A DNA stretch of 64,000 bases from Isurus oxyrinchus (taxonomy: Eukaryota): contig JANJGN010000009.1 in assembly GCA_026770705.1 (NCBI GenBank), positions 164,052,001-164,116,000 of the forward strand. Direction: 5' to 3'. Position 1 is the first letter of the stretch; the number at the start of each line of letters is the position of its first letter. Below the pieces are notes generated by a model that was not told where the DNA came from, ran no database searches, and was given only the letters and a program-made list of their open reading frames with translations. Below are positions 1,476-51,651 of this stretch, piece after piece. Position numbers and translations under genes: made by a program.

Positions 1476-1787
1476 TTTCAGGTGCATTGTGGGCAAAAAA
1501 AGAAGTAACAGGAGTTGTGGGAAGAGCGATCACAATAGAATGTCACTATGATGCACGTTACAAGTCACATATAAAATATTGGTGTTGCGGCTGGAGTCGC
1601 CAGTGTAATATTTTAGTATTGAAAAATCAGCAAAATGGAAGAATATCGATCACAGATAACAAGGCAACAGGAATATTTATTGTTACTATGGAGGATCTTC
1701 ACTCAAGAGATACAGGATGGTACAGCTGTGGTATTGACAAACCTGGCCTCGATTCAATGTTTGCTGTCTGGCTACAAATATCTTACG
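1476..1787 (+). CDS. Gene A (inhibitory CD300/pIgR/MDIR-like receptor), V-type Ig domain exon
   Basis: Acceptor ctcag| (an alternative phase-1 acceptor gives start 1482), donor TACG|gtacat, phase 1-1, 312 nt. Translates VSGALWAKKEVTGVVGRAITIECHY...KYWCCGWSRQC...DTGWYSCGID, with the CD300/pIgR C-x-Y, KYWC-x6-C extra disulfide and D-x-G-x-Y-x-C motifs. Confidence 0.93.
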
Positions 1788-2796
1788 GTACATTTCTTAC
1801 TGATTTTCTTTATTATTCTCAACTGAAATGTCTGCTCAATGTTTTATCTGGGAGGAAACATGACAGCTCCGATATCCCGAGGCTCCACAGCAATGCAGAG
1901 ACTTAAAGGTAAAGGGCAGAGGTCGGGAAATCCAACTCATGTTACCCAAACCCAATTCATGGCCTGTCAAACATGTCAGAGTTGAACTTTACAAGTGAAC
2001 TAAACGGAAATTGAGAAGTTGTTTTGATGGTAAAAGAAGCCTCTTTATTAATTGTTGAGACATTGGGCTGGATATTCAGCCTCAAAGCGGGTAGGGGCAA
2101 TTCGGAAAATTCCCCGCTCGGCCTTGGAAGAAAGTGCCCACAAAGGTGGGATTTCCATTGCTGGGAGCTGTGCCCAGGCTGCAGTCTGGCCAGCCACACC
2201 AGGAAGAAATGCAGAGGCAGCCACAGGGACTGCCGGCTGCGGAGATGGGCTGTTTAAAAGGCCCCTCCTTAATGCCCTTGGACTTTGTAACAGCTAAACT
2301 CAAAACACAAAGGCCCTTCACCCCTCACCCCCCACAGCCCACAAAGAGGGTGGGTATAAGGGGAAAATTTGTCATGAGAGTTCTTGGAGGTGGGTGGAAG
2401 TGTACAGCTTGAAGTCAGGAGCATGATGGATTATAAGGCGTGGGTAAAGGGACATAGGGGGCATTAACGGCCAAACGTGATGGATGAGGATGTGACTTGA
2501 CATAGGGGGCATGAGATGGACCTTTTGAACTTAGCTCTTAAAAGGTCCCCTCATGCAAACCAGTGTTTACAGCTCCTCTGAGGGGCTTTGGACTACGACT
2601 CATTCAAAACCTGGCCCGAGTCCATGAAAATTGCAGAGGAGTAGGACGTGTCTGTCTCCACAATGGAGGCAGCCAGGTTGGAGTGTAAAAAACAAAAATA
2701 CAAACAAAAAACTGCGGATGCTGGAAATCCAAAACAAAAAGTAAGAAATACCTGGAAAATCTCAGCAGGTCTGGCAGCATCGGCGGAGAAGAGCAC

Positions 2797-2835
2797 AGTT
2801 GATGTTTCGAGTCCTGATGACCCTTCAACAGAACT
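2797..2835 (-). ncRNA. Minimal type-I hammerhead ribozyme motif in PLE pLTR
   Basis: Minus strand reads agtt-CTGTTGA-a-gggtc(atcag)gactc-GAAA-c-ATC-aact; stems I and II pair. Confidence 0.7.
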
Positions 2836-5232
2836 AAGTAAAAAGAAGAGAGGGGTGAAATATAAGCTTGTCTAAGGGGTGGGGGTGGGGGTGCGGGTGG
2901 ATAGAGAAGTGGGGAGGTGGTTGTTGGGACAAGCGAGCAGTGATAGGAGGAGATAATCAAAAGATGTCACAGACAATAGAACAAAGAGGTGTTGAAGGTG
3001 GTGATATTATCTAAAAGAATGTGCTAATTAAGAACGTATAGCAAGACAAGCAAGGTACAGATAGGTCATGTGGGGGTGGGGTGAAATAAGACTAAAAGGG
3101 CATAAAATGTATAGATAAATGATCAGTGGAATACATTAAAAATATTGCAAATAGGTGGGAAAAGAAAAATCTATATAAATTATTGGAAAAAAGAAAAAGG
3201 ATGGGGAAGAAATGGAAAGGGGGTGGGGATGGAGGAGGGAGTTCAAGATCTAAAGTTGTTGAATTCAATATTCAGCCCGGAAGGCTGTAAAGTGCCTAGT
3301 CGGAAGATGAGGTGCTGTTCCTCCAGTTTGCGTTGAGCTTCACTGGAACAATGCAGCAAGCCAAGGACAGACATGTGGGCAAGAGAGCAGGGTGGAGTGT
3401 TGAAATGGCAAGCGACAGGGAGGTTTGGGTCATTCTCTGCGGACAGACCGCAGGTGTTCTGCAAAACAATCACCCAGTCTGCGTTTGGTCTTTCCAATGT
3501 AGAGGAAACTGCATTGGGAGCAACGAATGCAGTAGACTAAGTTGGGGGAAATGCAAGCGAAATGCTGCTTCACTTGAAAGGAGCGTTTGGGCCCTTGGAC
3601 GGTGAGGAGAGAGGAATTGAAGGGGCAGGTGTTGCACCTTTTGCGTGGGCATGGGGAGTTGCCATAGGTGGGGGTTGAGGAGTAGAGGGTGATGGAGGAG
3701 TGGACCAGAGTGTCCCAGAGGGAACGATCCCTATGGAATGCCACCGGGGGGGTGAAAGGAAGATGTGTTTGGTGGTGGCTTCATGCTGGAGTTGGCGGAA
3801 ATGGCGGAGGATGATCCTTTGAATGTGGAGGCTGGTGGGGTGATAAGTGAGGACAAGGGGGACCTTATCATGTTTCTGGGAGGGAGGAGAAGGCGTGAGG
3901 GTGGATGCGCTGTAGATGGGCCGGACACGGTTGAGAGCCCTGTCAACGACCGTGGGTGGAAAACCTCAGTTAAGGAAGAAGGAGGACATCTCAGAGGAAC
4001 TGTTTTTGAAGGTAGCATCATCGGAACAGATGCGACGGAGGCAAAGGAACTGGGAGAATGGGAAAGTGTCCTTACAGGAAGCGGGGTGTGAGGAGCTGTA
4101 GTCGAGGTAGCTGTGGGAGTCGGTAGGCTTGTAATGGATATTGGTGGACAGTCTATCACCAGAGATTGAGACACAGAGGTCAAGGAAGGGAAGGGAAGTG
4201 TCAGAGATGGACCATTTGAAAATGATGGAGGGGTGGAGATTGGAAGCAAAATTAATAAATTTTTCCAGGTCCAAACGAGAGCATGAAGCGGCACCGAAGT
4301 AATCATCAATGTACCGGAGAAAGAGTTGTGGGAGTGGGCCGGAATAGGACTGGAACAAGGAATGTTCCACATACCCCATAAAGGGACAGGGGCTCATGTG
4401 GGTACCCTTAGTCACACCTTTTATTTGGAGGAAGTGAGAGGAGTTGAAGGAGAAATTGTTCAGCGTGAGAACAAGTTCAGCCAGATGGAGGAGAGTAGTG
4501 GTGGATGGGGATTGTTCGGGCATCTGTTCGAGGAAAAAGCTAAGGGCCCTCAGACCATCCTGGTGGGGGATGGAGGTGTAGAGGGATTGGACGTCCATGG
4601 TGAAGAGGAAACAGTTGGGGGCAGGGAACTGGAAATTGTTGATGTGACGTAAGGTGTCAGAGGAATCACGGATGTAGGTGGGAAGGGACTGGACAAGGGC
4701 AGAGAAAAAGGATTCAAGATAACGAGAAATGAGTTCCGTGGGGCAGGAACAGGCTGACACGATCAGTCTGCCGGGACAGTTCTGTTTGTGGATTTTGGGT
4801 AGGAGGTAGAAGCGGGCCGTCCGAGGTTGGGCGACTATCAGGTTGGAAGCTGTGGGAGGAAGATCCCCAGAGGGGATGAGGTCAGTGACAGTCCTGGAAA
4901 CAATGGCTTGATGTTCAGTGATGGGGTCATGGTCCATGGAGAGGTCGGAGGAAATGTCTGCGAATTGACGCTCAGCCTCTGTGAGGTAGAGGCCAGTGCG
5001 CCAGACAACAACAGCACCACCCTTGACAGCGGGTTTGATGACAATGTTGGGGTTGGATCTGAGGGAACGGAGTGCAGTAAGTCACAAAACAACTGTTTGC
5101 TGAAATGCTAAACAAAGATAAATATTGAGATAAAAGCAAAGAACTGCGGATGCTGGAAATGCAAACCAAAGACAGAAATAGAAATATCTGGAAAAACTCA
5201 GCAGGTCTGGCAGCATCGGTGGAGAAGAGCAC

Positions 5233-8640: not shown

Positions 8641-8655
8641 TTACATTTCCTCAAC

Positions 8656-13040: not shown

Positions 13041-13370
13041 AACCCGTGTCTGTTCCTGTGCTTAGATTTTCATCACCAGCAAATGTCTCATGTTCTGGGG
13101 GTTCAGTGTCCGTCTCCTGTGAGTCTGTCCAGGGATCCCTTCCCATTCAGTACACATGGTATGAAAAGACCCTGTCTGAAGATTCAAAGATCTCTGACAC
13201 CAATAAACTGGATCTACATTGTCAATCCTTCAAACAGCAACATCATCAATATTACTGCACAGCCTCGAATAATCAGGGAGTAAAATCCAGTGACACTGTC
13301 ACTGTTAACTCAACACTCATGAATGTAACAACGAAAAGCTACAGTTATGTGATACAAATTGGAAACATTG
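13041..13370 (+). CDS. Gene A, C2-type (FCRL-like) Ig domain exon
   Basis: Polypyrimidine tract + ccaacag|, donor ATTG|gtaagt, phase 1-1, 330 nt. Translates EPVSVPVL...VSCESVQGSLPIQYTWY...QYYCTASNNQGVKSS. Confidence 0.93.
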
Positions 13371-15695: not shown

Positions 15696-15813
15696 GACCT
15701 GAGTATTTTTGTGATGTTTCTACAACAGTATCACCAACTACACATTTGACAAGTACAGATATAATTTCCACTACCAATCGATCCACACCTTCAGATCCCG
15801 AAAATGCTGAAAG
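15696..15813 (+). CDS. Gene A, Ser/Thr-rich stalk exon
   Basis: ttccacag| ... GAAAG|gtacaa, phase 1-2. Translates GPEYFCDVSTTVSPTTHLTSTDIISTTNRSTPSDPENAE. Conserved in the second copy. Confidence 0.88.
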
Positions 15814-16804
15814 GTACAATGTTCTCATGGATTGGCACTGCTTCCATATGTGAGAGATACGATTGGCCAAAGGAGTGAAAGTTGTTCATTAATTTGGAAA
15901 GTAGCTCATCAGAATGGAAATGGTGGCTGGGTTTATATCATGCTGTTGTGTTAGCTTCTTAATGAGGGTGCATTTTTCTGTTGGAAAATACAAGCAAGGA
16001 GTGAGCTTTTCCATTGTGTTGCCGCTCAGATGGTGTTTTTTGCCTTATTCACCTTGATTACTTCACCGCTAAGGTAATCTCACAGTGTGTGAGGAGTTGT
16101 ACTTGTCAAACTTACCTTGCTGCTGTCTACACTGACAGAGTACTTGTATTTGGGCTGATGAAAAGGAAGAATTAGCGTGATATATCTGCACATCCTTTGG
16201 TTTCACTAATGAGAGACATCTTGCAGCTCTGGTCCCGTTTCCATATTATAAACCTAAGCTGTTGACAATAAGTAGCAGAAATTGTAGTCCGATGTAAACA
16301 CTCAGGAATCGGGTCTTTGAAGTTACAATGGTGATAAAGAGAAAACGCCAACTAAATGTCAAACAGAAAGAGGGACAGTTGGAAATGGACAGCAGGTATG
16401 TCCGCAGCTGTGGAGAAAATAAACACGTTCATGGTTTGGGTGCAGACACTTCTTCAGAATTCTAGTCCACACGCGAAGTGAAACAGGTCCACTCACCCCA
16501 CAGATCCCAACTGAGCTGCTGAATGTTTCCAGAATCTTCTGTTTTCCATTCATATTTCTAGCACATGCAGTGCACTTACTTTTATCCAGATTATTGTCAA
16601 TGATTTAAGAAGTATAGAAAGTATCTGATTTTTATTTTAAGACAAATCTCTATGTCTGCTCTGTTGTATAAAGTTGACAACAAAGATCATCTGAATATGA
16701 AATCCATATATGTATGAAACAGTTATTACTTCCACTTTTTTCAGGGAACATCAGGTATTCTTGCATTTGGATTTTAATAATTAAAACTGACTCAGTATTA
16801 AACA

Positions 16805-17310: not shown

Positions 17311-17399
17311 TCTGATTTACATTGTGCTCGGAGTGCTGGGGGGCATTCTTGTGGTGTTTGCTGTTTCTCTACTTCTGTACCTGAGGCAAATCAACAAGG
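17311..17399 (+). CDS. Gene A, transmembrane exon (uncharged)
   Basis: tgtttcacag| ... AAGG|gtgagt, phase 2-1, compatible with neighbouring exons. Translates SLIYIVLGVLGGILVVFAVSLLLYLRQINK. Confidence 0.92.
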
Positions 17400-19489: not shown

Positions 19490-19542
19490 GTACAAACTGC
19501 ATTCCAAGTCAGCGGAGAGACAAGACTCTCCATTATAATCAG
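19490..19542 (+). CDS. Gene A, first cytoplasmic exon
   Basis: atttttcag| ... CAG|gtaagg, phase 1-0, which exactly bridges the TM exon and the last exon. Translates GTNCIPSQRRDKTLHYNQ. Confidence 0.8.
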
Positions 19543-20172: not shown

Positions 20173-20484
20173 GAATTGGCAGCAGAGGAAGAGGGCACTG
20201 TGTATGCAAATGTAAACCACACTCAAAGGAGCTCGGCAGGAACACACAGAGAGGGAACTGCCGAGTTGAATAATGAGGAAATCACATATGCAGCAGTGCA
20301 ATTACAAAAGAAATCGTCTACACAGAGAGGTGAAGGGACAAGTCACTCAGTTAACAACCCGGACAGTGTCATCTACAGTGGAGTCATGATTCACAACCAG
20401 CCCACAAAGAAAAACCCTAAAACTCCATTACATGATACTCCCCAGGAATCTGAAATGGCAATTTATGCTACCGTTACTCATTAG
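20173..20484 (+). CDS. Gene A, terminal cytoplasmic exon with ITSM/ITIM motifs
   Basis: atttag| phase 0, ends at TAG. Contains TVYANV, ITYAAV, VIYSGV and AIYATV. Confidence 0.93.
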   Translation, partial: ELAAEEEGTVYANVNHTQRSSAGTHREGTAELNNEEITYAAVQLQKKSSTQRGEGTSHSVNNPDSVIYSGVMIHNQPTKKNPKTPLHDTPQESEMAIYATVTH

Positions 20485-33358: not shown

Positions 33359-33943
33359 AGGAGGCTGAGGTGGAGGTGGTGACTGAGAAGGTTGAGGTGG
33401 AGGCAGTGACTGAGGAGGTTGAGGTGGAGGCAGTGACTGAGGAGGCTGAGGTGGAAGCAGTGACTGAGGAGGTTGAGGTGGAGGCAGCGACTGAGGAGGC
33501 TGAGGTGGAGGCAGTGACTGAGGAGGCTGAGGTGGAGGCAGTGACTGAGGAGGTTGAGGTGGAGATGGTGACTGAGGAGGCTGTGGAGGAGGTGGTGACT
33601 GAGGAGGCTGAGGTGGAGGCAGTGACTGAGGAGGTTGAGGTGGAGGCAGTGGCTGAGGAGGTTCAGGTGGAGGCAGTGACTGAGGAGGTTGAGGTGGAGG
33701 CAGTGGCTGAGGAGGTTCAGGTGGAGGCAGTGACTGAGGAGGCTGAGGAGGAGGTGGTGACTGAGGAGGCTGAGGAGGAGGTGGTGACTGAGGAGGCTGA
33801 GGTGGAGGCAGTGACTGAGGAGGCTCAGGTGGAGGCAGTGACTGAGGAGGCTGAGGTGGAGGTGGTGACTGAGGAGGCTGAGGAGGAGGCAGTGACTGAG
33901 GAGGCTCAGGTGGAGGCAGTGACTGAGGAGGCTGAGTTGGAGA
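33359..33943 (+). repeat. 27-bp minisatellite (GAGGAGGYTGAGGTGGAGGCAGTGACT)n
   Basis: About 21 tandem units; open frame EEAEVEAVT. Confidence 0.95.
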
Positions 33944-34569
33944 GTAAGAGAGAATGGGAGAGGTGATGAGAGAGAGTGGGAGAGAGAGAGAGAAAGAGAG
34001 ACCAAGATGGAAAGGTGGGAGAGCGATAGAGGGCGGGAAACTGGAGACAGAGAGAGAGACAGTGGGAAAGGGGGAGAAAGAGAATGGGAACACGGTGGGC
34101 AGAGAGAGAGAGAGTGGGAAAGGGTCAGGGTGGGAAGGCCAGGCAGGGGGATCAGGTCAGGGACACAGGCCCATGCAAGCACATTCCAGGCAGGCCTGAG
34201 GGGGAGGGGATGTGTCCAGCCTGGTATGAGGATTGGGTGGTCCTGACTCCCTCCAGGGGAAGGGGCTGTAGAAGAGAATTGAAAGTGAGAGGGGGGTGAG
34301 CCGCAGACTGCTCCGTTGGTCTCAGCAGCACTTTCACCCCACTCCTCCAGTGAGGGGACTCGCACGTTTTATGGCAGAGGCAGCAACAGCCTCAGAGAAG
34401 GCGGCAACTGAGGAGGACACGGCAATGGCTGAAGTGGAGGCACAGAAATGGAGGTGGAGGCTGCGGGTCGGGCAATATGGCAGAGGAGGAGTTGGCAAGG
34501 GCAGCGGAAGCAGAGGTGGTGATGGAGTTGGCAACAGCAGTGGAGTTGGCTGAGGAAGAGGCAAGAGTG

Positions 34570-35105
34570 GAGGAGGCTGAGGTGGAGGAAGTAGCTGAGG
34601 AGGCTGAGGTGGAGGCAGTGACTGAGGAGGCTGAGGTGGAGGCAGTGGCTGAGGAGTTTGAGGTGGAGGCAATGGCTGAGGAGGCTGAGTTGGAGTCAGT
34701 GACTGAGGAGGTTGAGGTGGAGGTGGTGACTGAGGAGGTTGAGCTGGAGTCATTGGCTGAGGAGGCTGAGGTGGAGGTGGTGACTGAGGAGGTTGAGGTG
34801 GAGGCGGTGACTGAGGAGGTTGAGGTGGAGTCAGTGGCTGAGGAGGCTGAGGTGGAGGTGGTGACTGAGGAGGTTGAGGTGGCGTCAGTGACTGAGGAGG
34901 TTGAGGTGGAGGCAGTGACTGAGGAGGTTGAGGTGGAGGCAGTGACTGAGGAGGTTGAGGTGGAGGCAGTGACTGAGGAGGTTGAGGTGGAGGCAGTGAC
35001 TGAGGAGGTTGAGGAGGAGGCAGTGACTGAGGAGGCTGAGGTGGAGGCAGTGACTGAGGAGGCTGAGGTGGAGGCAGTGACTGAGGAGGCTGAGGTGGAG
35101 GTGGT
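34570..35105 (+). repeat. 27-bp minisatellite inside the 305-aa acidic ORF 34477-35394
   Basis: About 20 units of the same repeat. Confidence 0.95.
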
Positions 35106-35959
35106 TGCCGAGGCGATGGAGGTAGTGAATGTCGGGGTGGAGGAGGAGACATCAGCAGCGACAGCAGCAGAGACAGTGACTGAGGCTGAGGAGGGGGAGG
35201 CAGCGGCTGTGACAGTGACAGAGGGAGAAGCAGCGAAGGCGGCAGCAGCAAAGGCTGAGGCCACAGTGAGGGAGGCTGTGGAGAGGGAGGTGGAGGTGGG
35301 GCAGAGGCAGCGAGGAGACGGTACGAGACCAGGAGCAGCAACAAAACCTGCCTTGTGGTTTGTGAGGCTCAGGGCAATGGCGACTATGAGTTGATATCTT
35401 CCATGTGCCATGTGTGTGTCTCCGAGTCAGCGCACCGGACCACACTGCTTCTGCCCGATTAGGGCGCTTCAGTGGAGTCCGACACCAGTCCAGTGCCACC
35501 CAGCTCCCATTCCCGAGGACAGGTGATGGAACCTGCCCAGTGCCAGGATGAGCTGCTTGGTAAGATCGGGAGGTGGGAAGTAGAGAAGGCAGCCGACCAG
35601 GAAAAGCTGGAGGATATCTCCAGGATTACTGACTGTCTCCAAGAAGAAACTCTTGTAGCCTTCAGGCAGGGTATATATATGTTTATATAGCTGCAATTTA
35701 AAGTTACCTGCCACATCCCTTTTAACACTTTCTAATGCAGCATCGCTCTGATCAGAATCAGATTTATTGGGGTTGTGCAAATGTCTCCCCAGCCTCTGAT
35801 ATAACATTAAAAAGCTGCTTTTTCCTTTCCAGTTGCAGTAAGAGGACTGTCCCAGCCTCTCAATGTGACAGGGCAGCCCAGGACTATGTCTCTCAGGAGC
35901 CTCAGCCTTTACAATTGTTCTACAGGTCTGAACTTTTCTCAGCTTGTTTGGACAAGAAC

Positions 35960-40262: not shown

Positions 40263-40302
40263 ATGATGTGGATTTTGATTCTCCTCATTAGTTCTCTGCC
40301 CG
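40263..40302 (+). CDS. Gene B, signal peptide (leader) exon
   Basis: ATG ATG TGG ATT TTG ATT CTC CTC ATT AGT TCT CTG CCC G|gtgagt. MMWILILLISSLP joins in phase 1 to VSG-ALW of the V exon, giving a classic signal peptide. Confidence 0.9.
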
Positions 40303-40409
40303 GTGAGTGACAGCCAGAGCTGGATGTTCCGATATTCTGAGTTGGTTTAACTCTCGTGCGCTGGTTATACAGGAGATGTTTAAATATTTGGAGACATGCA
40401 AAGGCACAA

Positions 40410-40700
40410 GAGAGGTCTTGGGCACAGTGGGTAGTGTCTCTGTACCTGAGCCAGAAGCTCTGTGTTTGAGTCCCACTTCTGTTCTTGTTGAGAATGGAAG
40501 GCGCGTTCTAACCAGGACCAACAGATTGATTATCAACCTGAAAATCTACCAACAGACCGAAGGCTGGTGGTAAGAGGGTTTGAGATCCGAGTCCAACATG
40601 ATTGATGTGGAGTGGTGCCGCTCATTCTGTTGTCTCCGGAGGTTAGTGACCTGTTCCAGGGAAAACAAGCTTTGGAAAGCAAAAGTAAACATGTGCTTTG
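40410..40700 (+). mobile_element. tRNA-derived SINE in gene B intron 1
   Basis: ggcacagtgggtag A box; gtttgagtccc B box. Confidence 0.5.
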
Positions 40701-42161
40701 ACTGCCGCATCCGTCTCTAGATGTGGGAAGTCTCCTAAGTCTAAAGGCACAAAATAGTCAGCAAAACCAAATGAGTAATAATTGTGAAGTATTTTATTAC
40801 CCTGTGAATTAACTATCACAACATGGGAATAGTTAACAAATAAACTGAACTGCATTATTAATTATGAATGATAAATAAAGGAGAATTAAATTTTCAGAAA
40901 GCTATGCAAGCAACATTTTGAAAATGAAAACCTTTTTTAATTGGTAATTTTCAATATAATCTGATGTCCAGTATAGACTGAAGACTGCAGCGGTAATAAT
41001 CCCACAAATAAAACATGTCCCAAGTTGGCGAATATTTCTGTTTTTGAAAGTACAGTTGATGAAATATTGTGTTATGAGGCTCTCTCAGTGACACTGTTCC
41101 TCACTGGTAGATGGTTGGTCTACATCACTCTTCTCATAAGTAGCCTTTTCTTGTTCATTCTTTAACTTTAAAAAACTAGATTTTGCTCATCACTCAGTAT
41201 TGCCACCTCTCCATCATTTCGATGAATCTATTTTATAACACACAATGTTAAACTCCCAGCCCCATCTGCTCTTAACCACCTCCCCAAAATAGTTTGTGCC
41301 TCTAGCTGATCAATTTTATGCAGAATACTTGATGTACTTATGGACAGGAAACTGAATCATGTTTCTGTCTGTTTGGCAATCTTCTTCTTTTCAATCCTTC
41401 CTCTTTCTGATCTGATCTCTTTCCCATTCCCTTTACATCTGTAACTTTCCCTGTATCTTTTTCCTTTCCTTCATTTCTCTCTAGCCATTTAATTATTTTC
41501 AATCTCTCTTTTGTTATTTTAGTGCAAACTCTTTCCCCACAGCATGAGTTTCTCTCCCAGCAAGGCCATTGGTCTCATGAACGTTCAAGTCAAGGCATCC
41601 AAATCCCTACCTCAGGAATCCATCCATACTGTAAGGCCACCTATCACACAACCTCGCAAACTTTCAAGACCTTCAAATCCTACCTTTGGACATCCCTAAC
41701 TCATTCAAGATCTGAACAACCCCTCCTGCAAGGACACAACCCTACCCCGCACCCCACCCACCTCAGATCAGAGCAGGGAACTGTCGGCTCCTGTGACCAC
41801 CTCCACACTGCTCCCCAGCCGACTGCAAATCAGGCCTGTCAATCAGACTGGTTTCTGGCTGTGGAACCTCCTGATGATGTCATACGCAGTCTAGGGTGAA
41901 ACCCCAAAATATGAGGCAGAACCCCAATTTCCAGGTTCCCTCACTCTACTAGCCCCTGCCAATATGTCAAGAAAATGTCCCAATTATCTCACGAGTATAT
42001 CATTGTCTGAGACGTGCTTTGGAACCACAGTGAGGCTCTGATAAGTGTCTATATGAATGATTACTCTCATCACAAACTGGATGGAATTTAACTCATTAAA
42101 ATGCATCTGTTTGAATTAAGCAGTTATTTCCAGTTCAGTTTCTCAAATGTTGTCTCCTCAG

Positions 42162-42476
42162 TTTCAGGTGCATTGTGGGCAAAAGAGAGAGTAACAGGAG
42201 TTGTGGGAAGAGCGATCACAATAGAATGTCACTATGATGCACAGTGGTACAAGTCACATATAAAATATTGGTGTCGCGGCTGGACTCGCCAGTGTAATGT
42301 TGTAGCATCGACAAATTGGCGAAATGGAAGAATATCGGTCACAGATAACAAGTCACAAGGATTATTTATTGTTACTATGGAGGATCTTCACTCAGGAGAT
42401 ACAGGATGGTACAGCTGTGCTATTGAAGTAACTGGCCACGATCCAATGTTTAATGTAAAGCTACAAATATCTTACG
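42162..42476 (+). CDS. Gene B (activating-type CD300/pIgR/MDIR-like receptor), V-type Ig domain exon
   Basis: Same splice sites as gene A, 315 nt. Translates ...IECHYDAQWYKSHIKYWCRGWTRQC...GDTGWYSCAIE. Confidence 0.93.
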
Positions 42477-43336
42477 GTACATTTCTTACTGATTTTCTTT
42501 ATTACTCTCGACTGAAATGTCTGCTCAATGTTTTATCTGGGAGGAAACATGACAGCTCCGATATCCCGAGGCTCCACAGCAATGCAGAGTCTTAAAGGTA
42601 AAGGGCAGTGGTCGGGAAATCCGACTCATGTTACCCAAACCCAATTCATGGCCTGTCAAACATGTCAGAATTGAACTTTACAAGTGAACTAAACGGAAAT
42701 TGAGAAGTTGTTTTGATGGTAAAAGAAGCCTCTTTATTAATTGTTGAGACATTGGGCTGGATATTCAGCCTCAAAGCGGGTAGGGGCAATTCGGAAAATT
42801 CCCCGCTCGGCCTTGGAAGAAAGTGCCCACAAAGGTGGGATTCCCATTGCTGGGAGCTGTGCCCGGGCTGCAGTCTGGCCAGCCACACCAGGAAGAAATG
42901 CAGAGGCAGCCACAGGGGCTGCCGGCTGCGGAGACGGGCTGTTTAAAAGGCCCCTCCTTAATGCCCTTGGACTTTGTAACAGCTAAACTCAAAACACAAA
43001 GGCCCTTCACCCCTCACCCCTCACAGCCCCCAAAGGGGGTGGATGTGAGGGGAAAATTTGTCATGAGGGGGCTTGGAGGTGGGTGGAAGTGTACAGCTTG
43101 AAGTCAGGAGCATGAGGGGGTATAAGGCGTGGGTATAGGGATAGAGGGGGAACGAAGGGCCAAGCGGGTTGGATGGGGGTGTGACTTGACATAGCGGGCA
43201 TGAGATGCACCTTTTGAACTTAGCTGTTAAAAGATCCCCTCATGCAGACCAGTGTTTACAGCTCCTCTGAGGGGCTTTGGACTACGACTCAATCAAAACC
43301 TGGCCCGAGTCCATGAAAATTGCAGAGGAGTCGGAC

Positions 43337-45455
43337 GTCACTTTGGTCTGAAGGCTGCACAAAGCACAGGGTAGAGGCCCTGGACTAAGACACCTGCCTT
43401 TATCTTGTACAGAAAGTGTTCACATGTGAGTGACATGAACATTGCTCATCAAAACAAGGAGCGATAGGCAGGGAGACATTCTTTGGAGTTTATTGACAAT
43501 AATGAACAGTATGTACAAGTGATTAACACCCGTGCCCAGGACGTGAAACTACTTCTCCTCAACCACGCGGTGTCTGGCAGCACTGTTGAGACCTTCTGTG
43601 CTCGGTGGGTGACCACGGGGGTTGGGGTCCTTTATCCAGCCTCTTAATCACATTTTGGTTTGATGTTGTAAGTGTCCTTTAAATCATGTCTTTGGTTTTG
43701 CAGTGACCCTAACTTAGGGGCTGCGTTTTATATTATCCCTCATTTTGTTAATTTAGTTTATTGGGTTGGCTTTAAAAGAGCTACATCTTCTCAACTTTCC
43801 TAATCCTCCCGCTACATCTTGGTGCTCCGCAGACATCCACAGTGGAGGTAAAGACAGTCTGCTGACTGCTATGCTCTGTCTGTGATAACTTTGGCGGGCA
43901 TCCTCTGGAGGCCTGAGGCCTGTAGGGCCCCGGCTTCCTTTCGAGGTCCTACTGTGTGGCATTAGCACCCTCCTTTTCCTGTGGACTGGGAGCTGTCCAG
44001 GTCACAGTAAGAGGGGAGTTACCAGGATGAATGGCCCCGGAGGGTACACATGTTGATCCTTCTCGCTATGGGTACCCAATGGCCATTGGCTGAATCCTTG
44101 AGGAGCAGGTGTAGCTGGAGTGAGATCGAGCTGCCTGCACCCCTCTCGCATACACACTGTCAGGGGCCAACTATACATCAGCAATGGAGTTCAGCCCTGC
44201 AGCAGTGTAGGAACGATGCCCTGGACCAACGTCTCCATGGCAGCTGCCATCCTACCAGTGTTGACCTCGGTGCAGTGACATGCCGGCGCTATCACCTCAG
44301 AGTGCAGGCGGACGGACTCCTCCATTGTGCCTTGCAATCTGAGGGGTGCAGCAGATATCCCTTCCTGATGTTCCCGCGTTGGCCTTTCCAGCTCCAGCAA
44401 CTGTGACATGACCAAATCCAGAAACGCGTCACCTGACTCGAACTCAGCAAATTTATGGCCTCCAGCTGCCCACTGAGTGCCGGACACCTGGGAAGCCCCT
44501 GCCGCTGCCAGCTGTGGATCAGGCAGTGCAATTTGCTCACCAGCTGTGACCCTGAGTCTACTCTAAAGCTAGATCTCACCGAGGGGTGTACCTCTGCACT
44601 GGTGGAGGGTGTGGGTGAGGGGAGTGACGGTACATCAAGGAGGGTCCCTCCAGGTTCCTCTTCAGAGATTTCTTTGGGGATTACTTGGTGTCCCTGGTTC
44701 TCCATCGGCTGTTTCCCAGATGTGCGTGTGGAAGCAAGTGGAAATATTTTGTGCATGGCAGTGGCCTGTGAAACAGGACACATCACTCACAGCATGGTTG
44801 TCTGATGGATGTTGCACTGCTGGACCCTCACTTGGCTGAGCACCGCAGACCTCACCGTCAGAACAGGATTGGTCCAGGCCGTTGCCGGCCAGCTGGATGG
44901 CTCTGTTTACAAAGTACTAGTACTGTTCGGGAACATGATGTTCATATTTTCATACATGTCGCTGAATTTGTCAGTCACATTTATGCCTCTATTATCAACC
45001 AAAGAGCGGGATTGTCCCCGATTTGCACTAAGTGCGTTAGTGGGCGGGGGAATCGATGTTTTACACACCGGCCACAATGGGGGGTTTTCAGGCCGCATCG
45101 TCCCAAACCCAACGCATTAGTTATGCATTCCCGGGAAACATACCATTTCCATGGTGAGTGGGATCTCATTCACCCCAAACACCATCATTTCACTGCTTCA
45201 TCAGGCCCAGCACCATATGTAAAGTCCAGCCTCGTGCACACATCTCAGTGTTTCCAACCCAGGACCACTGCAGGGAAGATATCCCCAAGAGGCAAAAAGA
45301 CTGTAGCTCCCAGGTTTAGTGAGCTGTCACTGCAACACATTGTGTACACTGTGGGGGCCCTGCTGTGATGTCCTCTACTCCCACTCTGGCTGCAGTATGG
45401 ACAGCGCTGTGACCAACCAGGCCTGGGAGGCGGGGGCAGCAGTGGTATACCCACT
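43337..45455 (-). mobile_element. Harbinger-like transposon fragment with a single Tx1-like insertion at 43564-43780
   Basis: Homologous to 57435-58790. Myb/SANT-like start RGKKTVAPRFSELSL on + at ~45290. The Tx1 piece is flanked by CTACTTCTCCTCAAC / CTACATCTTCTCAAC. Confidence 0.72.
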
Positions 45456-47444
45456 GAATGTTATTAAGTTAACCCTCACTGTCAGATAATGTAAACAGTA
45501 TGAAAAGTGTGGATGAGAAACCCTTAGAAACTTCCTTGCTGGATGGAAACAAATGCTGGAGAGAATGGAAATTTCTAAATGAAATGAGTGGATGCCTGAT
45601 TGTTTTAGAGAATGAAATGCAGGTACAACAAATTTTTTAGGGATCTGAGGAGAGGGCTATCTTGCAATATGATGAAGTATAGAATATTGAGATTCTTAAT
45701 TCAATTTGTTTCACACTTTTTGGTCACCATATTAACTGAAAATTTTATTTAAATGAGAGAAGGTCATCATCTAATCGTTTATTAATTGTGTTTAATTGTA
45801 TGCAGTGGTGGCATTAATTGGTGATTCACTTGTGCACCTATAAACAGATGCAGACTGAAACTGCGGGTGGTGGATTTGATTAGATTCACACAGTAAACAG
45901 CACTTTAAAACAGTTCCACAAGTCTTAACCTATCTAACCTCAGAGCTAATCTTTCTCTTTTCCGTTCAGCAACTAACACTGTAGATTTAAAAAGCTATAG
46001 AAGTGCAATAATTTTACCACACAGTGCTTTCACATTGGGGTGTCCACTGACAGAAACTGGGTCTTCAGGTCTGGGCCTTGTACACACTGTCTCCTGGGAA
46101 TTCTGACCTGCTACCCTGCTGTCTTCAGGGAGATCTGGCCAACCATCCTGCTGTGTTCTGGGAGATCTAAGCAGCTACCCCCTCACATAGGCTTCAGTAT
46201 TCCCTTAAATGTGTTTCTTCTCTTTCATCTCTCTTTGTAGTACCCAGTCTGTTCAGAAATGCTTTTATCCCAGGATTGATTAAATCAATCTTTACTTTAA
46301 TTCTTAGACTTGTAAAAACAAACGTACCCTATCTTTATGTCACTTCATGACACCTTTTTACAACCTGCATATATCCCCCTTTGAACTAAAACAACTTAAT
46401 TCAAACTATTCCTGTTATTGCTTCATGTACAAATCTGTTGAAGTTCTTTTTTGTTCATTAACATATCAAAACCACTTCTTACTGTTGACTTTTGACCCTA
46501 TCCACTGATGAGGCAGTCCACGTCATGGAACCATAACCTTAAATCTGGAGATAGGCTCGTCAGGGATGTCAGGAAGCACTTCTTCACGCAAAGTATAGTG
46601 GAAATCAGGAACACTCTCCTCAAAAAAGCTCTTTAGTTCAATTGAAAATTTCAAAACTGATTGACAGATTTTATCTGGTAGCAATATTCGGGTTATGGGA
46701 CCCAGGTAGGTAAATGGACAGAAGATACTGGTCAGTTGGGATTTAATTGAATTGTGGAACAGGCTGAAGGGGCTGCATGTCCGAATCCCTTTTCCATGTT
46801 CTGGAGCCCCAGTTAATTTTTCAGTGGTCTGGGCCTTGTGAGTAACAATGTGCTGTGAAACAAGCTCACAAACAGTTAGCATTTCAAAGAGACACTTTCC
46901 AATCACCAGGCAAACTGTGACCTGTGTTGTTTCAGAGTACAGTTTGTGACAGTGAAAGCAGTGAAGGCCTGCCAAACCTCACTAAAAATGTTGGTGAAAG
47001 TGTCACTTTTCTCTGGCTAATCCCTTGACCAAAGAGGGAATTTTAATTCCCCTCCCCCATCCTGCATCGGGTTGAAGCATGATGGGATTTGCTGGATCCA
47101 GAACCTTCTCCAGCACAGCTTGTGATCCAGGAGACACACGAAAGCTTCACCCCCACCCCCAGGCAAATGTTTTATACAATTTCTCCCTCCCCATGATTGG
47201 CCAATCCTGCCCCAAGCAGCAAAGTCACCCTGACTCCCTCCTCGCTGCTGTGCTCCGAGGACAAATTCCCACCAATTTCTCCCATGTCCAGTTCCCAAAC
47301 CCAAATTTAACATCCACCCCATAGAGTGGTAGATGTGTTGGTGAGATTCCAACATGGCAGAGCCTGGCTGAGATGAAGTGCAAAGTTTGAAGACTATTTG
47401 ATTATTAAATGTTCAGTATCTGAATGTTTCTTTCTTTCCAACAG

Positions 47445-47774
47445 AACCCGTGTCTGTTCCTGTGCTTAGATTTTCATCACCGCTAAATGTCTCATGTTCT
47501 GGGGGTTCAGTGTCCGTCTCCTGTGAGTCTGTCCAGGGATCCCTTCCCATTCAGTACACATGGTATGAGAAGACCCTGCCTGAAGATTCAAAGATCTCTG
47601 ACACCAATAAACTGGATCTACATTGTCAATCCTTCAAACAGCAACATCATCAATATTACTGCACAGCCTCAAATAATCAGGGAGAAAAATCCAGTGACAC
47701 TGTCACTGTTAACTTAACACTCATGAATGTAACAACGAAAAGCTGCAGTTATGTGATACAAATTGGAAACATTG
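47445..47774 (+). CDS. Gene B, C2-type (FCRL-like) Ig domain exon
   Basis: ccaacag| ... ATTG|gtaagt, 330 nt, 5 amino-acid differences from gene A. Confidence 0.93.
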
Positions 47775-50098
47775 GTAAGTGTTACTTTCTACAAACAATG
47801 TGGCGAATGAATGTCTTAAATTCATGTCTATCGAAACTGGTCACTGTTTCAGTTCCTTCAGTCAATCTGAGAAATTGCAACTGGCCAAATTCACTCTCTC
47901 TGGTTCCTCAAACATTCTGAACAAGGTCACTAAGTTGCATTTTTCATGAAAAATGGACAGGATCAGAAAATATCCCCAAAACATGCAAAAATATTGCAGA
48001 ATCTCCAACAAACCCATCGAATCAAAATAGCATTTGATTGACAGAGCTTTCATAAAGCAATTTGTCTATTTCCAGCAGATGGAATTGTGAAATGCAACCT
48101 CCAACTGTTGTGTCCTAGTTTGGGAAGGATATCACTGATAGAATAGAGAAGAATTGAATTAAAATGAACCCTTGGATGAGAGGTTTTAGTCATGAGGAAA
48201 GTATCATCACAACTGAGGTGAATGACCAGCTGGAGGACGTGGAAATTGTTAGAAATTTGGATAAGGTAACTCTAACTATTTCCACTAGTCAGTGAGTCAG
48301 CAACAAGAGAGCATTAACTTTAAAATTATCACTAAAAGGACAAAGGGAGAAATTTGGAGAATTTTATTGATGCAAACTGTTTTTAGGACATGGAATGCCC
48401 AACTGAAATAAGTTTACAAACAAATTTAATAATAGATTTTAAAAGGGAAACAAATGTATGAGGGTGTGGGAAAAGGACAATGAAATGGAATTAAATGAGG
48501 AGATCATTCAGAGAACCAGCATTGGAGCGATGGGCTGAATTCCCTCCCCTGTGTTGTAAAAATTCCATCATTCCGGTCAATATCTCAAATTATCCTGTAT
48601 AAAAAATTTGTTCCCTCCCCATAAAACAATGACCCTGGTTCTGACATAAGGAGGGCTTTAGCCTATTTGAATGTAGCGGTTCAATTTTCTGCAGAGTGGG
48701 TGCAGCATGTTCACCGAGAAACACCAACATGGGCACAAAACAAAGAGAATCACATTTTCACCTGAGCAGCAGGAGACAGGAATTTACATATGCAAATATA
48801 TTGACTCTGGTCATGTGGTCTCTTGCCTCAGTTGTCAGGGAAGAAGGGTGGAATTTTACACCCCCATTGCGCCAGGGACTGGGCTGTAAAATGCAGCCAG
48901 CCATTCTAAACTCCATGCACTCCAGCAGGACCATAAAATCCCACTGTCACAAGGCTCTGAGCAAAGGCTGTCAGCAGCAGGTAGAAATTACCCCTGTAAA
49001 CTGTGTTTGTACTGGAGTTGTCAGCAGGGACTCAGTTCCACTCTGACCTTTGATGCCAGTCTTTTGTAGTTACAAGTTCCCCTTAAGAATTAAAATTCAG
49101 GCTGATACCACTGTCCAGCACTGAGGTAGTGCTATACTGGTGGTGGTGCTGCTGTGTAGATGAGGTGTTAAACTGAGGATCCACATCCCCCTTAGGTAGA
49201 TGTAAACATTTCCAGGGTATTATTCACAGAATAGGGAAGTTCTCCTGGTGTCCTTGAAGCCTTTATTCCTCAACCAATACACACAAATTGGGAGCAGGAG
49301 CAGGCCACTTGGTCTTTTGAGCCTGTTAATGTCACTACAAAACAGATCATCTAGTGAATGTTTTACTGATGTTTGTGGGGCTTTATTGTGTAGGAATGAA
49401 CTTCCACGTTTCCCAACATTAAAACTTTGGCTTTACTTCAAAAAAGTACTTCATAGGCTCTGAAGCACTTTGGAATATCCCAAGGTTGTGAAAGGTGATG
49501 AATCAGCACAACTTGTTTCTTACTTTTTGAAACAAACCATTTATTAAAATACATCTGAACCAATTATCTGAGTGCAAACTGCAGGGGGGGGAGGGGGAGG
49601 GAGGAGCCAGTCCCAGCAGCAAGGTGGTCATTATAATTAAATGGTCCGAAAATCACTGGCAGGTTTGAGACATTCATGGTCAGTGGGTGAAGATTCTCAT
49701 CTTTACTGCAAGCTCAGAAAACTGCCCCCAAAGTGCAGAAAGTGACCATTGCCAGTATTAGGATGTGACTGTTTAATGTGTTCACATGAAATTCATGTCA
49801 AGAATGTGTATCTCTGGATTGCAGTCCACCAACTTGAGCCCTTACCAGGCCCACTTCTAACTCTGTCCCACCAACTCTCAGATATAGGAAAGAATGTGGA
49901 ATTACCAGTAAAGATAGATCACCATCAGGTATCAGCAACCTCTCCACTTGTGACCAGAGAGGGGTAAATTACACAGAAATCAATTCTACCTGCCAGGCTT
50001 TTCCTCAATTAATGAGGTTCCATTTGACAATGATGCTCTCTCAGTTGACTACAAGTGAAAATGAGGTGAATCTGAATGTTATTCCCTTGTGTCAACAG

Positions 50099-50216
50099 GA
50101 CCTGAGTATTGTTGTGAAGCTTGTACAAGAGTATCACCAACTACATATTTGACAAGTACAGATATAATTTCCACTACCAATCGAGCCACAACTTCAGATC
50201 CCGAAAATGCTGAAAG
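50099..50216 (+). CDS. Gene B, stalk exon (Cys-enriched)
   Basis: gtcaacag| ... GAAAG|gtacaa. Translates GPEYCCEACTRVSPTTYLTSTDIISTTNRATTSDPENAE. Confidence 0.88.
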
Positions 50217-51560
50217 GTACAATGTTCTCATGGATTGGCATTGCTTCCATATGTGAGAGATACAATTGGCCAAAGGAGTGAAAGTTGTTCATTAATTGTA
50301 AAGTAGCTCATCAGAATGGAAATGGTGGCTGGGTTTATATCATGCTGTTGTGTTAGCTTCTTAATGAGGCTGCATTTTTCTGTTGGAAAATACAAGCAAG
50401 GAGTGAGCTTTTCCATTGTGTTGCCGCTCAGATGGTGTTTTTTGCCTTATTCACCTTGATTACTTCACCGCTAAGGTAACCTCACAGTGTGTGAGGAGTT
50501 GTACTTGTCAAACTTACCTTGCTGCTGTCTACACTGACAGAGTGGTTGTATTTGGGCTGATGAAAAGGAAGAATTAGCGTGATATATCTGCACATCCCTT
50601 GGTTTCACTAATGAGAGACATCTTGCAACTCTGGTCCCGTTTCCATATGATTAGCCTGAGCTGTCGACAATAAGTAGCAGAAATTGTAGTCCGATGTAAA
50701 CACTCAGGAACCGGGTCTTTGAAGTTACAATGGTGATAAAGAGAAAACGCCAACTAAATGTCAAACAGAAAGAGGGACAGTTGGAAATGGGCAGCAGGTA
50801 TGTCCGCAGCTGTGGAGAAAATAAACACGTTCATGGTTTGGGTGCAGACACTTCTTCAGAATTCTAGTCCACACACGAAGCGAAGCAGGTCCACTCACCC
50901 CACAGATCCCAACTGAGCTGCTGAATGTTTCCAGAATCTTCTGTTTTCCATTCATATTTCTAGCACATGCAGTGCACTTACTTTTATCCAGATTATTGTC
51001 AATGATTTAAAAAGTATTGAAAGTCTAGGGTCTGAATTTTCCGCTCGGCGGGGGTGGGGGTGGGGTAGAGCGGGAGCGAGCACGGGCAGCTGTGGACCCC
51101 ATCGCCATCCACCATCGGGTTTTTGACGCCATTTTGCGCGGGCGGCCAATTTAGGCCATCCCAGCGTATTTCCCGGCTCCCGAGGATAGCGGCAGTGGGC
51201 GAGAAGCGGGGGGTGTGCACAGACAACCGGGTCCAATGGTGACCCAGCGGCCTGTTTAAATGAAGGCCTGGCAGCCTGTTCCAGCTGCTCACAATGGCCA
51301 GTGCAAAGAATTTTCACTTACAATTCCGCTTAGCCTTACAGTTAGACATTATGGACATGCTAAAGAAATTTGCTTCGTTTGATTTTTATCTAATGATCAT
51401 GAAGTTGATAAGTAGAACTTTAGTTGATTCTTTCAGCTAAAGTCCCTTGTCTACTTTATGTTGCTGCAAAAAATTACAGTGTAAAGCGGAGAGTCATGTT
51501 TCAAAAATGAAACAGTCTCATTTCATTTAAATGGTTTGATATTTCTTCTCTTTTGCTCAG

Positions 51561-51651
51561 TTACATTATCTGGGATGTGATACGCTGGGTGCTCTTTACT
51601 CTCCTGGTGATTTGTGCTGTTTCGGGCACATGGTGTACGAGAAAATCTAAG
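51561..51651 (+). CDS. Gene B, transmembrane exon with charged residues (Arg, Asp); the downstream terminal exon is unresolved
   Basis: tcttttgctcag| phase 2, matching the stalk donor; donor AAG|gtgaga. Translates SYIIWDVIRWVLFTLLVICAVSGTWCTRKSK. Confidence 0.87.

What the first reader, a model, noticed from the sequence alone, without database searches (positions are those of the whole stretch)
1476..51651. Adjacent inhibitory/activating paired receptor: shared ectodomain, unrelated signalling modules
Seen: two tandem genes with all exon phases compatible and near-identical V-C2-stalk ectodomains. Gene A has a neutral TM plus four tyrosine motifs; gene B has an unrelated TM (IWDVIRWVLFTLLVICAV) with an N-proximal Arg. 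Established: this is the logic of KIR/LILR/PIR/CD300/SIRP pairs. An N-terminal TM Arg is the hallmark of FcR-gamma-associating receptors (FcalphaRI, GPVI, LILRA, NKp46), and skate MDIRs are a CD300/pIgR-related family with both types. Inference: a recently formed paired-receptor system in a cartilaginous fish, possibly undescribed for this lineage.
Basis: partly seen in the sequence, partly recalled or inferred. Interest (0 to 1): 0.9.

Follow-up and report, generated by a model that had tools for sequence, protein, structure and literature searches.

The report
Shark activating/inhibitory MDIR receptor pair
Two neighbouring shark immune-receptor genes share a recently copied outer part; one ends in an inhibitory tail and the other in an ancient membrane anchor with a conserved arginine. 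The second gene is spliced and transcribed as predicted, and both belong to the MDIR family already described in skates.

Summary
Gene A (V 1476-1787, C2 13041-13370, stalk 15696-15813) ends in a neutral membrane anchor and a tail with four tyrosine motifs. Gene B is a complete 311-residue reading frame (40263-55471) with an arginine in its anchor and an 18-residue tail without tyrosine.

The two genes share a 5' duplication, 94-97% identical, that stops cleanly in the stalk-anchor intron (A 16622 / B 51024). RNA-like contigs from two independent studies join B's stalk, anchor and tail exons at the predicted splice sites, with no mismatch on stalk and anchor.

The ectodomains are not uniformly near-identical: C2 95%, stalk 79%, V only 75%. 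V shows a nonsynonymous excess (pN/pS 3.4), mostly in the CDR-like loops.

The family is not undescribed. The closest named relatives are skate modular domain immune-type receptors MDIR2 (inhibitory type) and MDIR5, which carries the same arginine anchor. The anchor core (R-W-x-x-F) is kept in 32 further gene copies of 16 shark and ray species. Ectodomains group by lineage, not by signalling type, so such pairs form again and again.

The adaptor partner and gene A's expression are untested. Verdict: a new member of a known kind, of moderate interest. This scan noted similar arginine-anchor receptors elsewhere in this genome.

The parts
1476..1787 (+). Gene A, V-set exon (phase 1-1), pIgR/CD300 type
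   Evidence: Pfam V-set E 5e-9. Canonical splice sites. Gene B's copy matches pIgR D1/D5 and CD300f in the PDB.
13041..13370 (+). Gene A, C2-type Ig exon (phase 1-1), FCRL-like
   Evidence: Pfam Ig_3 and Ig_2. Gene B's copy matches the FCRL5 repeats. Splice sites.
15696..15813 (+). Gene A, Ser/Thr/Pro-rich stalk exon (phase 1-2)
   Evidence: Exon scan and translation. Aligns to the stalk of Heptranchias P0065.
17311..17399 (+). Gene A, neutral transmembrane exon (S)LIYIVLGVLGGILVVFAVSLLLYLRQINK (phase 2-1)
   Evidence: 54% identical to P0065 in the tblastn alignment covering this exon.
19490..19542 (+).
   Evidence: It is the candidate in the phase-constrained scan that resembles the corresponding segment of P0065, DTNNGGDNTLNDTQ. 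Splice sites. No RNA evidence.
20173..20484 (+). Gene A, last exon with stop. Tyrosine motifs: TVYANV 20197-20214 (ITSM-type), ITYAAV 20281-20298 and VIYSGV 20368-20385 (ITIM), AIYATV 20458-20475 (ITIM-like).
   Evidence: 54% identical to the tail of P0065.
40263..40302 (+). Gene B, leader exon MMWILILLISSLP(V), donor in phase 1
   Evidence: tblastn with catshark P0102 gives 12/13 identical residues. Sequence and donor.
42162..42476 (+). Gene B, V-set exon; 26 of 104 residues differ from gene A
   Evidence: Pfam V-set E 1.3e-9. PDB matches: pIgR E 4e-38, CD300f/CLM-1 E 4e-17. pN/pS 3.4.
47445..47774 (+). Gene B, C2-type Ig exon; 5 of 109 residues differ from gene A
50099..50216 (+). Gene B, stalk exon; 8 of 38 residues differ from gene A
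   Evidence: Covered without mismatch by spliced contigs X1 record 1, X2 record 8 and X9 record 22.
51561..51651 (+). Gene B, transmembrane exon (S)YIIWDVIRWVLFTLLVICAVSGTWCTRKSK with Asp273 and Arg276 (phase 2-0)
   Evidence: Joined to the stalk exon in 3 contigs from 2 studies with 0 mismatches. 78% identical to the catshark anchor. The R-W-x-x-F core is kept in all 33 copies collected, counting gene B.
55430..55471 (+). Gene B, last coding exon FQTLNESDPHSLT plus stop; the 3'UTR runs on at least to 55597
   Evidence: NESDPHSL matches ray tails. Phase-0 acceptor. Joined to the anchor exon in X2 record 8 and X9 record 22.
16622..16622 (.). End of the A/B duplication in gene A, inside the stalk-anchor intron
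   Evidence: 98.4% identity right up to this point and none after it.
51024..51024 (.). End of the A/B duplication in gene B, 537 bases before the arginine-anchor exon

Best explanation
Genes A and B are two neighbouring members of the cartilaginous-fish MDIR family (modular domain immune-type receptors). Each has a pIgR/CD300-type V domain, an FCRL-type C2 domain and a glycosylated stalk.

Gene A is the inhibitory member. It has a neutral anchor and a tail with ITIM and ITSM motifs. After tyrosine phosphorylation these motifs would be expected to recruit SH2 phosphatases (inferred).

Gene B is the activating-type member, 311 residues long. The same kind of ectodomain is joined to an old, conserved anchor with Arg276 in its outer third, followed by an 18-residue tail without tyrosine. 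The arginine most likely pairs with the membrane aspartate of an ITAM adaptor, by position FcR-gamma or CD3-zeta rather than DAP12 (inferred).

The pair arose when the 5' part of one gene (leader or promoter region through the stalk) was copied or converted onto the other. The exchange ended in the stalk-anchor intron.

Afterwards the V domains diverged under positive selection, mainly in the three CDR-like loops. The two receptors therefore probably see related but not identical ligands and give opposite signals.

Shown here: the gene structures, the duplication and its breakpoint, the splicing and transcription of gene B, family membership, conservation of the modules, and the recurrence of such pairs. 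Inferred: adaptor binding, phosphatase recruitment, ligand and cell type.
For: - Structure and duplication.
- Domain types: Pfam; PDB matches to pIgR, CD300f and CD300a for V, and to FCRL5 for C2.
- Gene B as RNA: contigs X1 record 1, X2 record 8 and X9 record 22 come from two studies. They join 50216|51561 and 51651|55430 at GT..AG borders, with 0 mismatches on B's stalk, which differs from A's at 8 of 118 bases. These runs show no depth over the intron bins 50400-51399.
- Family: UniRef-named MDIR5 and MDIR2 of the clearnose skate are homologues, with E-values of 5e-139 and 1e-71 against catshark P0102. MDIR5 has the same anchor, YISWKVGRWLLF, and MDIR2 the ITIM build. Genes A and B are 55-65% identical to them per domain.
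- Module conservation: 32 further copies (27 distinct sequences) of the anchor in 16 shark and ray species keep R-W-x-x-F.
- Tail: the NESDPHSL tail matches ray tails.
- Selection: V has pN 0.129 against pS 0.038, Fisher p = 0.012; C2 has a ratio of 0.6; introns are 94-97% identical.
- Recurrent pairing: in a tree of 42 V-C2 units the activating/inhibitory label needs at least 12 changes, 9 of them forced by well-supported branches. A, B and the great white shark gene form one group with 99% support. An electric ray has an adjacent pair that is 99.2% identical.
Against: - No test of adaptor binding or signalling was possible.
- The skate authors are recalled (from my memory of the abstract) as listing MDIR5 among forms without typical signalling motifs, so the arginine may not have been read as functional.
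- The residue three places before the arginine varies (Asp, Lys, Ser, Thr, Glu, Asn, Gly, Ala), so the arginine could sit at the membrane edge.
- The closest annotated relative, great white shark XP_041050570.1, is modelled with the anchor exon skipped. That would give a secreted protein.
- Gene A's leader exon is outside the window, and its expression was not examined.
- The runs are labelled RNA only by guess, although spliced contigs without introns argue for RNA.
- Part of the V-domain differences may come from patchy conversion by other paralogues. The great white shark V domain is a mosaic of A-like and B-like stretches.
Confidence: 0.72

Rival explanations
1. Gene B mainly makes a soluble decoy. 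The 91-base anchor exon is usually skipped, which shifts the frame and ends the protein after about ten more residues (RHSTNQILTA). The secreted V-C2 protein would then compete with gene A for ligand instead of signalling.
For: The RefSeq model of the closest relative, great white shark XP_041050570.1, ends ...PENPERHSRNQILRA. That is the reading obtained in the window by joining the stalk to the second acceptor at 55436; 8 of the last 10 residues are the same. Skipping a 91-base exon necessarily shifts the frame.
Against: All three contigs that cross B's stalk exon continue into the anchor exon, in two studies. No stalk-to-tail joint is among the joints and pieces listed there, though two joints were not shown. 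The anchor is under strong conservation across sharks and rays, which a rarely used exon would not be. Both forms may coexist.
Confidence: 0.12
2. Gene B is a membrane receptor, but its arginine has no adaptor role. The anchor would serve another purpose, such as assembly with a non-ITAM partner, retention until assembly, or no signalling at all. A and B would then not be a functional activating/inhibitory pair.
For: No adaptor binding has been shown for any MDIR. The arginine lies near the outer edge of the hydrophobic stretch, at position 7 of the best 19-residue window. A 2014 survey found no FcR-gamma in cartilaginous fish (PMC4016189).
Against: R-W-x-x-F is kept in all 33 copies collected across sharks and rays, which points to a specific contact. 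A short tail without tyrosine plus a membrane arginine next to an ITIM twin is the usual build of adaptor-coupled receptors (established knowledge on LILRA, NKp46, GPVI and Fc-alpha-RI). An earlier unchecked note of this scan reports a transcribed FcR-gamma gene in this same genome (s1-863553).
Confidence: 0.13
3. The pair is not real: A and B are two haplotypes or an assembly duplication, or the anchor exon is a chance open frame.
For: The high similarity (94-97%) of the shared part could in principle come from uncollapsed haplotypes.
Against: The copies have different transposon content in intron 1 (about 11 kb against 5 kb) and unrelated 3' ends. Each 3' end has its own conserved relatives in other species. 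B-specific stalk letters are joined to the anchor exon in RNA-like contigs. The pattern has 0 expected chance hits.
Confidence: 0.03

Closest known systems
Skate modular domain immune-type receptors (MDIR1-5; Cannon et al. 2006, Immunogenetics 58:362, cited in PMC3031540)
   Same: Same family by sequence. Named MDIR2 and MDIR5 are about 51% identical to gene B's catshark relative, and 55-65% identical to genes A and B per domain. They share the V (pIgR/CD300-like) plus C2 (FcR-like) modules. MDIR2 has the ITIM tail build of gene A, and MDIR5 has the arginine anchor and tail of gene B. Both belong to a multigene family with both receptor types.
   Different: The window comes from a shark, probably a lamniform close to the great white, not a skate. 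MDIR5 has two V-C2 units and gene B has one. New here: the tandem young pair with a mapped breakpoint, the excess of amino-acid changes in V, and the transcript evidence.
Mammalian CD300 (CMRF35-like) paired receptors, e.g. CD300A/CD300C and mouse CLM/MAIR
   Same: The V domain is of the same type (E 4e-17 to CD300f, 2e-11 to CD300a), including the extra Cys pair. They are clustered genes with ITIM members and charged-anchor members.
   Different: CD300 proteins have a single V domain and no C2 domain. Their charged residue is usually Lys or Glu in mid-membrane, coupled to DAP12, DAP10 or FcR-gamma (from memory). The shark anchor shows no sequence relation to theirs. These are not orthologues.
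Primate Siglec-5/Siglec-14 and Siglec-11/Siglec-16; also KIR, LILR and PIR pairs
   Same: Adjacent inhibitory and activating genes whose ligand-binding parts are kept similar by duplication or gene conversion. Their membrane and tail parts stay unrelated, with a membrane Arg or Lys in the activating member (established knowledge).
   Different: A different Ig family. Here the V domains are diverging (pN/pS 3.4) rather than being homogenised, while C2 and the introns stay close.
Polymeric Ig receptor (pIgR) and FCRL proteins
   Same: Best PDB matches: V to pIgR D1 and D5 (E 4e-38 summed over the domains), C2 to the FCRL5 repeats. Public annotation names the shark relatives 'pIgR-like', 'FCRL5' or 'FCRL6'.
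   Different: pIgR has only V-type domains and a long sorting tail. FCRL proteins have only C2-type domains. The shark genes mix the two domain types and carry other tails, so the automatic names mislead.

Membership tests
MDIR (modular domain immune-type receptors of cartilaginous fish) | Significant sequence homology to the named skate MDIR proteins | tested here: met
   MDIR5 (P0165) scores E 5e-139 and MDIR2 (P0202) E 1e-71 against gene B's catshark relative P0102. Genes A and B against MDIR2 and MDIR5: V 55-63%, C2 60-65% identity.
MDIR (modular domain immune-type receptors of cartilaginous fish) | Ectodomain built from modules resembling CD300/pIgR/TREM domains and FcR-homologue domains | tested here: met
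   V matches pIgR, CD300f, CD300a, TREM2 and NKp44. C2 matches FCRL5 and FCRL4. Pfam gives V-set and Ig_3.
MDIR (modular domain immune-type receptors of cartilaginous fish) | Multigene family with positively charged-anchor forms and ITIM forms | tested here: met
   Among full V-C2 units with an assignable 3' end, 22 were activating-type and 20 inhibitory-type, across many species. Both types lie side by side in the window.
Paired activating/inhibitory receptors (functional class) | Neighbouring genes with closely similar ectodomains | tested here: met
   About 40 kb apart on one strand. Shared part 94-97% identical in DNA. Protein identity: C2 95%, stalk 79%, V 75%.
Paired activating/inhibitory receptors (functional class) | Inhibitory member with ITIM or ITSM in its tail | tested here: met
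   ITYAAV and VIYSGV fit the ITIM pattern, TVYANV fits the ITSM pattern, and AIYATV is a near-fit. Binding of phosphatases was not tested.
Paired activating/inhibitory receptors (functional class) | Activating member with a charged membrane residue and a short tail without signalling motif | tested here: met
   Arg276 lies in the best hydrophobic window. The tail TRKSKFQTLNESDPHSLT has no tyrosine. This form is transcribed.
Paired activating/inhibitory receptors (functional class) | Physical and functional coupling of the activating member to an ITAM adaptor | not testable with these tools
The complex predictor takes only session sequences or microbial references. This needs co-precipitation or reporter assays.
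Paired activating/inhibitory receptors (functional class) | Both members expressed | tested here: inconclusive
   Gene B: yes, spliced contigs in two studies.
CD300 / CMRF35-like family (orthology) | A single V domain followed directly by stalk and membrane anchor | tested here: not met
   A C2 exon lies between V and stalk in both genes. Only the V domain is CD300-like.
pIgR (orthology) | Two or more pIgR-type V domains and a long cytoplasmic sorting tail | tested here: not met
   There is one V domain plus one C2 domain. The tails are of ITIM type or 18 residues long.
FCRL (orthology) | Ectodomain made only of C2-type FcR-like domains | tested here: not met
   The N-terminal domain is V-set of pIgR/CD300 type.

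The most novel reading that the evidence does not exclude
The arginine anchor plus short tail is an elasmobranch-wide signalling cassette, kept since before sharks and rays split. Recombination in the stalk-anchor intron repeatedly re-attaches it to the ectodomains of inhibitory neighbours. Each lineage thereby keeps making fresh activating counterparts of its inhibitory MDIRs, which then diverge in the CDR loops under pathogen pressure. Regulated skipping of the 91-base anchor exon adds a third, soluble output from the same gene. The window would show one such event with its breakpoint still visible.
Probability: 0.4. Interest if true: 0.55.

Novelty: new member of a known kind. Interest (0 to 1): 0.42.

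Why it matters
This gives a cleanly resolved and partly transcript-supported example of how paired immune receptors are made in the oldest jawed-vertebrate lineage. A young copy of the ligand-binding half is joined, at a visible intron breakpoint, to an old adaptor-type membrane module.

It links the many inconsistently named shark and ray gene models ('pIgR-like', 'CMRF35-like', 'FCRL5/6', 'CXADR-like') to the skate MDIR family.

It also argues against the published view that pIgR-like and FcR-like receptors are absent from cartilaginous fish (PMC4016189).

Finally, it offers a concrete pair for testing whether adaptor coupling through a membrane arginine already worked in sharks.

Tried and rejected
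- **Chance open frame:** rejected.
- **Haplotype or assembly artefact:** rejected.
- **Remnants of the other module:** I looked for an ITIM-type exon behind gene B and for a second arginine anchor elsewhere in the window. None was found.
- **Weak similarity past the breakpoint:** none between the two 3' halves.
- **Anchor plus tail alone as a database query** (region 255-304 of P0102): only the query itself came back, because the word index gave 2 candidates. This says nothing about wider distribution.
- **Literature:** the 2006 MDIR paper and a 2010 review were not held. Searches for shark CD300 or paired receptors and for shark ITAM adaptors gave nothing specific.
- **Joined proteins:** Exons were searched one by one by reference. 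Joined translations were made only inside local scripts, from the window file, to check reading frames and to build the tree.
- **Orthology to CD300, pIgR or FCRL:** considered and rejected on domain architecture.

Full report
**1. What is in the sequence**

A self-comparison of the window shows that its left part is repeated about 40 kb to the right on the same strand.
- A 1-2649 matches B 40691-43338 at 94.2%.
- A 12874-16622 matches B 47278-51024 at 96.6%.
- Shorter matching pieces lie between these, interrupted by different transposon insertions. Intron 1 is about 11 kb in A and 5 kb in B.
- Similarity stays at 98.4% up to A 16622 / B 51024 and then stops completely. More sensitive searches find nothing shared after that point.

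Inside the shared part lie three exon pairs with canonical splice sites and matching phases:
- a V exon (A 1476-1787, B 42162-42476; phase 1-1);
- a C2 exon (A 13041-13370, B 47445-47774; phase 1-1);
- a Ser/Thr/Pro-rich stalk exon (A 15696-15813, B 50099-50216; phase 1-2).

**2. The two different ends**

Gene A continues with three exons:
- a neutral membrane exon, 17311-17399, reading LIYIVLGVLGGILVVFAVSLLLYL;
- a last exon, 20173-20484, carrying TVYANV, ITYAAV, VIYSGV and AIYATV.

Gene B continues with the 91-base exon 51561-51651, reading (S)YIIWDVIRWVLFTLLVICAVSGTWCTRKSK. It has a strong acceptor and an AAG|gtgagag donor in phase 0.

Tails of ray homologues led me to NESDPHSL at 55442-55465, behind a phase-0 acceptor at 55430. 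The catshark protein P0102 led me to the leader exon MMWILILLISSLP at 40263-40302.

Joined inside a local script, the six exons of gene B give 936 bases and 311 residues with one stop, at the end. The best hydrophobic window is IIWDVIRWVLFTLLVICAV, with Arg276 at its seventh place. Gene A's leader must lie just before the window's first base, because the duplication already runs at position 1.

**3. Is gene B used?**

One reads call was allowed, so I laid 50000-55999, which covers the stalk, anchor and tail exons. Three runs hold spliced contigs. Two runs are from one sample of study P1 and one is from study P4. All three are labelled RNA only by guess.
- X1 record 1 joins 50098-50214 to 51559-51651.
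- X2 record 8 and X9 record 22 join stalk, anchor exon and 55428-55597.
- The skipped stretch is bounded by GT..AG.
- Stalk and anchor parts show no mismatch. B's stalk differs from A's at 8 of 118 bases, so these are gene B transcripts.
- These runs have no depth over the intron bins 50400-51399, which fits RNA.

Two short X1 contigs run from the anchor exon into the intron, which suggests some unspliced RNA. Gene A's expression was not examined.

**4. What the domains are**
- Pfam finds V-set in the V exons, and Ig_3 and Ig_2 in the C2 exons.
- Against solved structures, B's V exon matches pIgR (E 4e-38 over several domains), CD300f/CLM-1 (4e-17), CD300a (2e-11), TREM2 and NKp44.
- The C2 exon matches the repeats of FCRL5, with the best single repeat at 36 bits.

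**5. Family**

A search of B's V exon against 1.8 billion representatives gave 2125 hits. The closest, at 55-68% identity, are gene models from sharks, skates, rays and a chimaera. Their automatic names are inconsistent: 'polymeric immunoglobulin receptor-like', 'CMRF35-like molecule 8', 'Fc receptor-like protein 5/6', 'CXADR-like', 'uncharacterized'.

A second search with the catshark protein returned two proteins that UniRef names Modular domain immune-type receptor 5 and 2 of the clearnose skate.
- MDIR2 has the V-C2-stalk-neutral anchor-ITIM build of gene A.
- MDIR5 ends in ...SYISWKVGRWLLFLLLVIWSISTAVFTRGSKKRDESEPRHSAHELQ, which is gene B's module.

So the genes belong to the MDIR family described in 2006. 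That paper is cited in PMC3031540 but could not itself be read.

**6. The arginine anchor is old**

Besides gene B, I collected 32 copies (27 distinct sequences) of the anchor from 16 species of sharks (Scyliorhinus, Hemiscyllium, Chiloscyllium, Heptranchias) and batoids (Amblyraja, Leucoraja, Rhinoraja, Raja, Mobula, Hemitrygon, Hypanus, Narcine). All keep R-W-x-x-F. The residue three places before the arginine varies: Asp, Ser, Lys, Thr, Glu, Asn, Gly, Ala. The only chimaera relative found is of the ITIM type.

**7. Pairs recur**

I cut 42 V-C2 units with a known 3' end out of these proteins, added A and B, and built a tree.
- Units group by lineage, not by signalling type.
- The activating/inhibitory label needs at least 12 changes, 9 of them forced by well-supported branches. 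It is no more clustered than shuffled labels (85 of 500 shuffles are as low).
- A, B and the great white shark gene form one group with 99% support.
- Close activating/inhibitory neighbours also occur in Heptranchias, Chiloscyllium, skates, Mobula/Hemitrygon and Narcine. In Narcine, one fused gene model contains an activating and an inhibitory gene whose V-C2 parts are 99.2% identical.
- Rows left out: units whose 3' end could not be typed, and near-duplicate isoforms.

**8. Divergence after copying**
- Introns differ by 3-6%.
- C2 has 5 changes in 109 residues (pN/pS 0.6).
- The stalk has 8 changes in 38 residues, all nonsynonymous.
- V has 26 changes in 104 residues plus one inserted codon: pN 0.129, pS 0.038, ratio 3.4, Fisher p = 0.012.
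- By alignment to pIgR D1, 15 of the 26 V changes fall in the three CDR-like loops. This is my reading of that alignment.
- The great white shark V domain is B-like in its first two thirds and A-like in the FG region. Patchy exchange among paralogues therefore contributes to the differences.

**9. How it most likely works**

Shown: a tandem inhibitory-type and activating-type MDIR pair, with the activating-type gene transcribed in the predicted form.

Inferred from established knowledge of LILRA, NKp46, GPVI, Fc-alpha-RI and the membrane assembly rules of ITAM adaptors: an arginine in the outer third of the anchor pairs with the aspartate of FcR-gamma or CD3-zeta. A mid-membrane lysine would point to DAP12 instead.

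A 2014 survey reported no FcR-gamma, pIgR or FcRL relatives in cartilaginous fish (PMC4016189). This locus contradicts the receptor part of that claim.

**10. Rival readings**
- The great white shark RefSeq model ends as if the anchor exon were skipped (RHSRNQILRA; the window gives RHSTNQILTA). A soluble isoform is therefore plausible as a by-product.
- A non-adaptor role for the arginine cannot be excluded.
- An assembly artefact is contradicted.

**11. Limits**
- The assembly gap 62767-63273 was left untouched.

**Verdict**

The system is a new member of a known family, with a clear breakpoint and transcript support. Interest is moderate.

Noticed in passing
window 50216 / 55436 (gene B); protein P0184: Great white shark RefSeq XP_041050570.1 ('Fc receptor-like protein 6') is the closest annotated relative of gene B. 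It is modelled with the 91-base anchor exon skipped. The same splice in the window would give a secreted protein ending RHSTNQILTA.
   Followed up: partly
window 55459: RNA-like contigs read G (X1, X2) or A (X9) where the assembly has C. Either change turns His308 of gene B's tail into Gln. This may be an allele or a very close paralogue.
   Followed up: no
window 51622-51816: Two short X1 contigs run without mismatch from the anchor exon across its donor into the intron. This is unspliced RNA or a minor alternative end. The open frame continues to 51744.
   Followed up: no
protein P0016 (Narcine bancroftii XP_069798680.1): One gene model fuses an activating-type and an inhibitory-type MDIR gene, with transposon-like sequence between them. 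Their V-C2 parts are 99.2% identical, so this is an even younger pair than the one in the window.
   Followed up: partly
window 33319-35391 and 60900-61700: Long, G+C-rich minisatellite-like arrays that translate as EVEAVTEE repeats on the + strand and S/T-rich repeats on the - strand. One copy lies between genes A and B and one lies after gene B. They gave spurious tblastn hits.
   Followed up: no
window 3969-5081 (-): An open frame with a weak reverse-transcriptase match (Pfam RVT_1, E 1e-5) lies inside gene A's first intron and is absent from gene B's. It is part of the transposon load that makes intron 1 of A twice as long.
   Followed up: partly
window 50000-55999, run X3: Run X3 (another organism label, kind unknown) covers every bin at 95-99% likeness. 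Over B's stalk it reads mostly gene A-like letters. It is probably DNA of a related species or cross-laid paralogous sequence.
   Followed up: no
PMC4016189: This published survey states that pIgR, FcRL and FcR-gamma relatives are absent from cartilaginous fish. The MDIR genes here (pIgR/CD300-type V plus FCRL-type C2) speak against the receptor part of that statement.
   Followed up: partly
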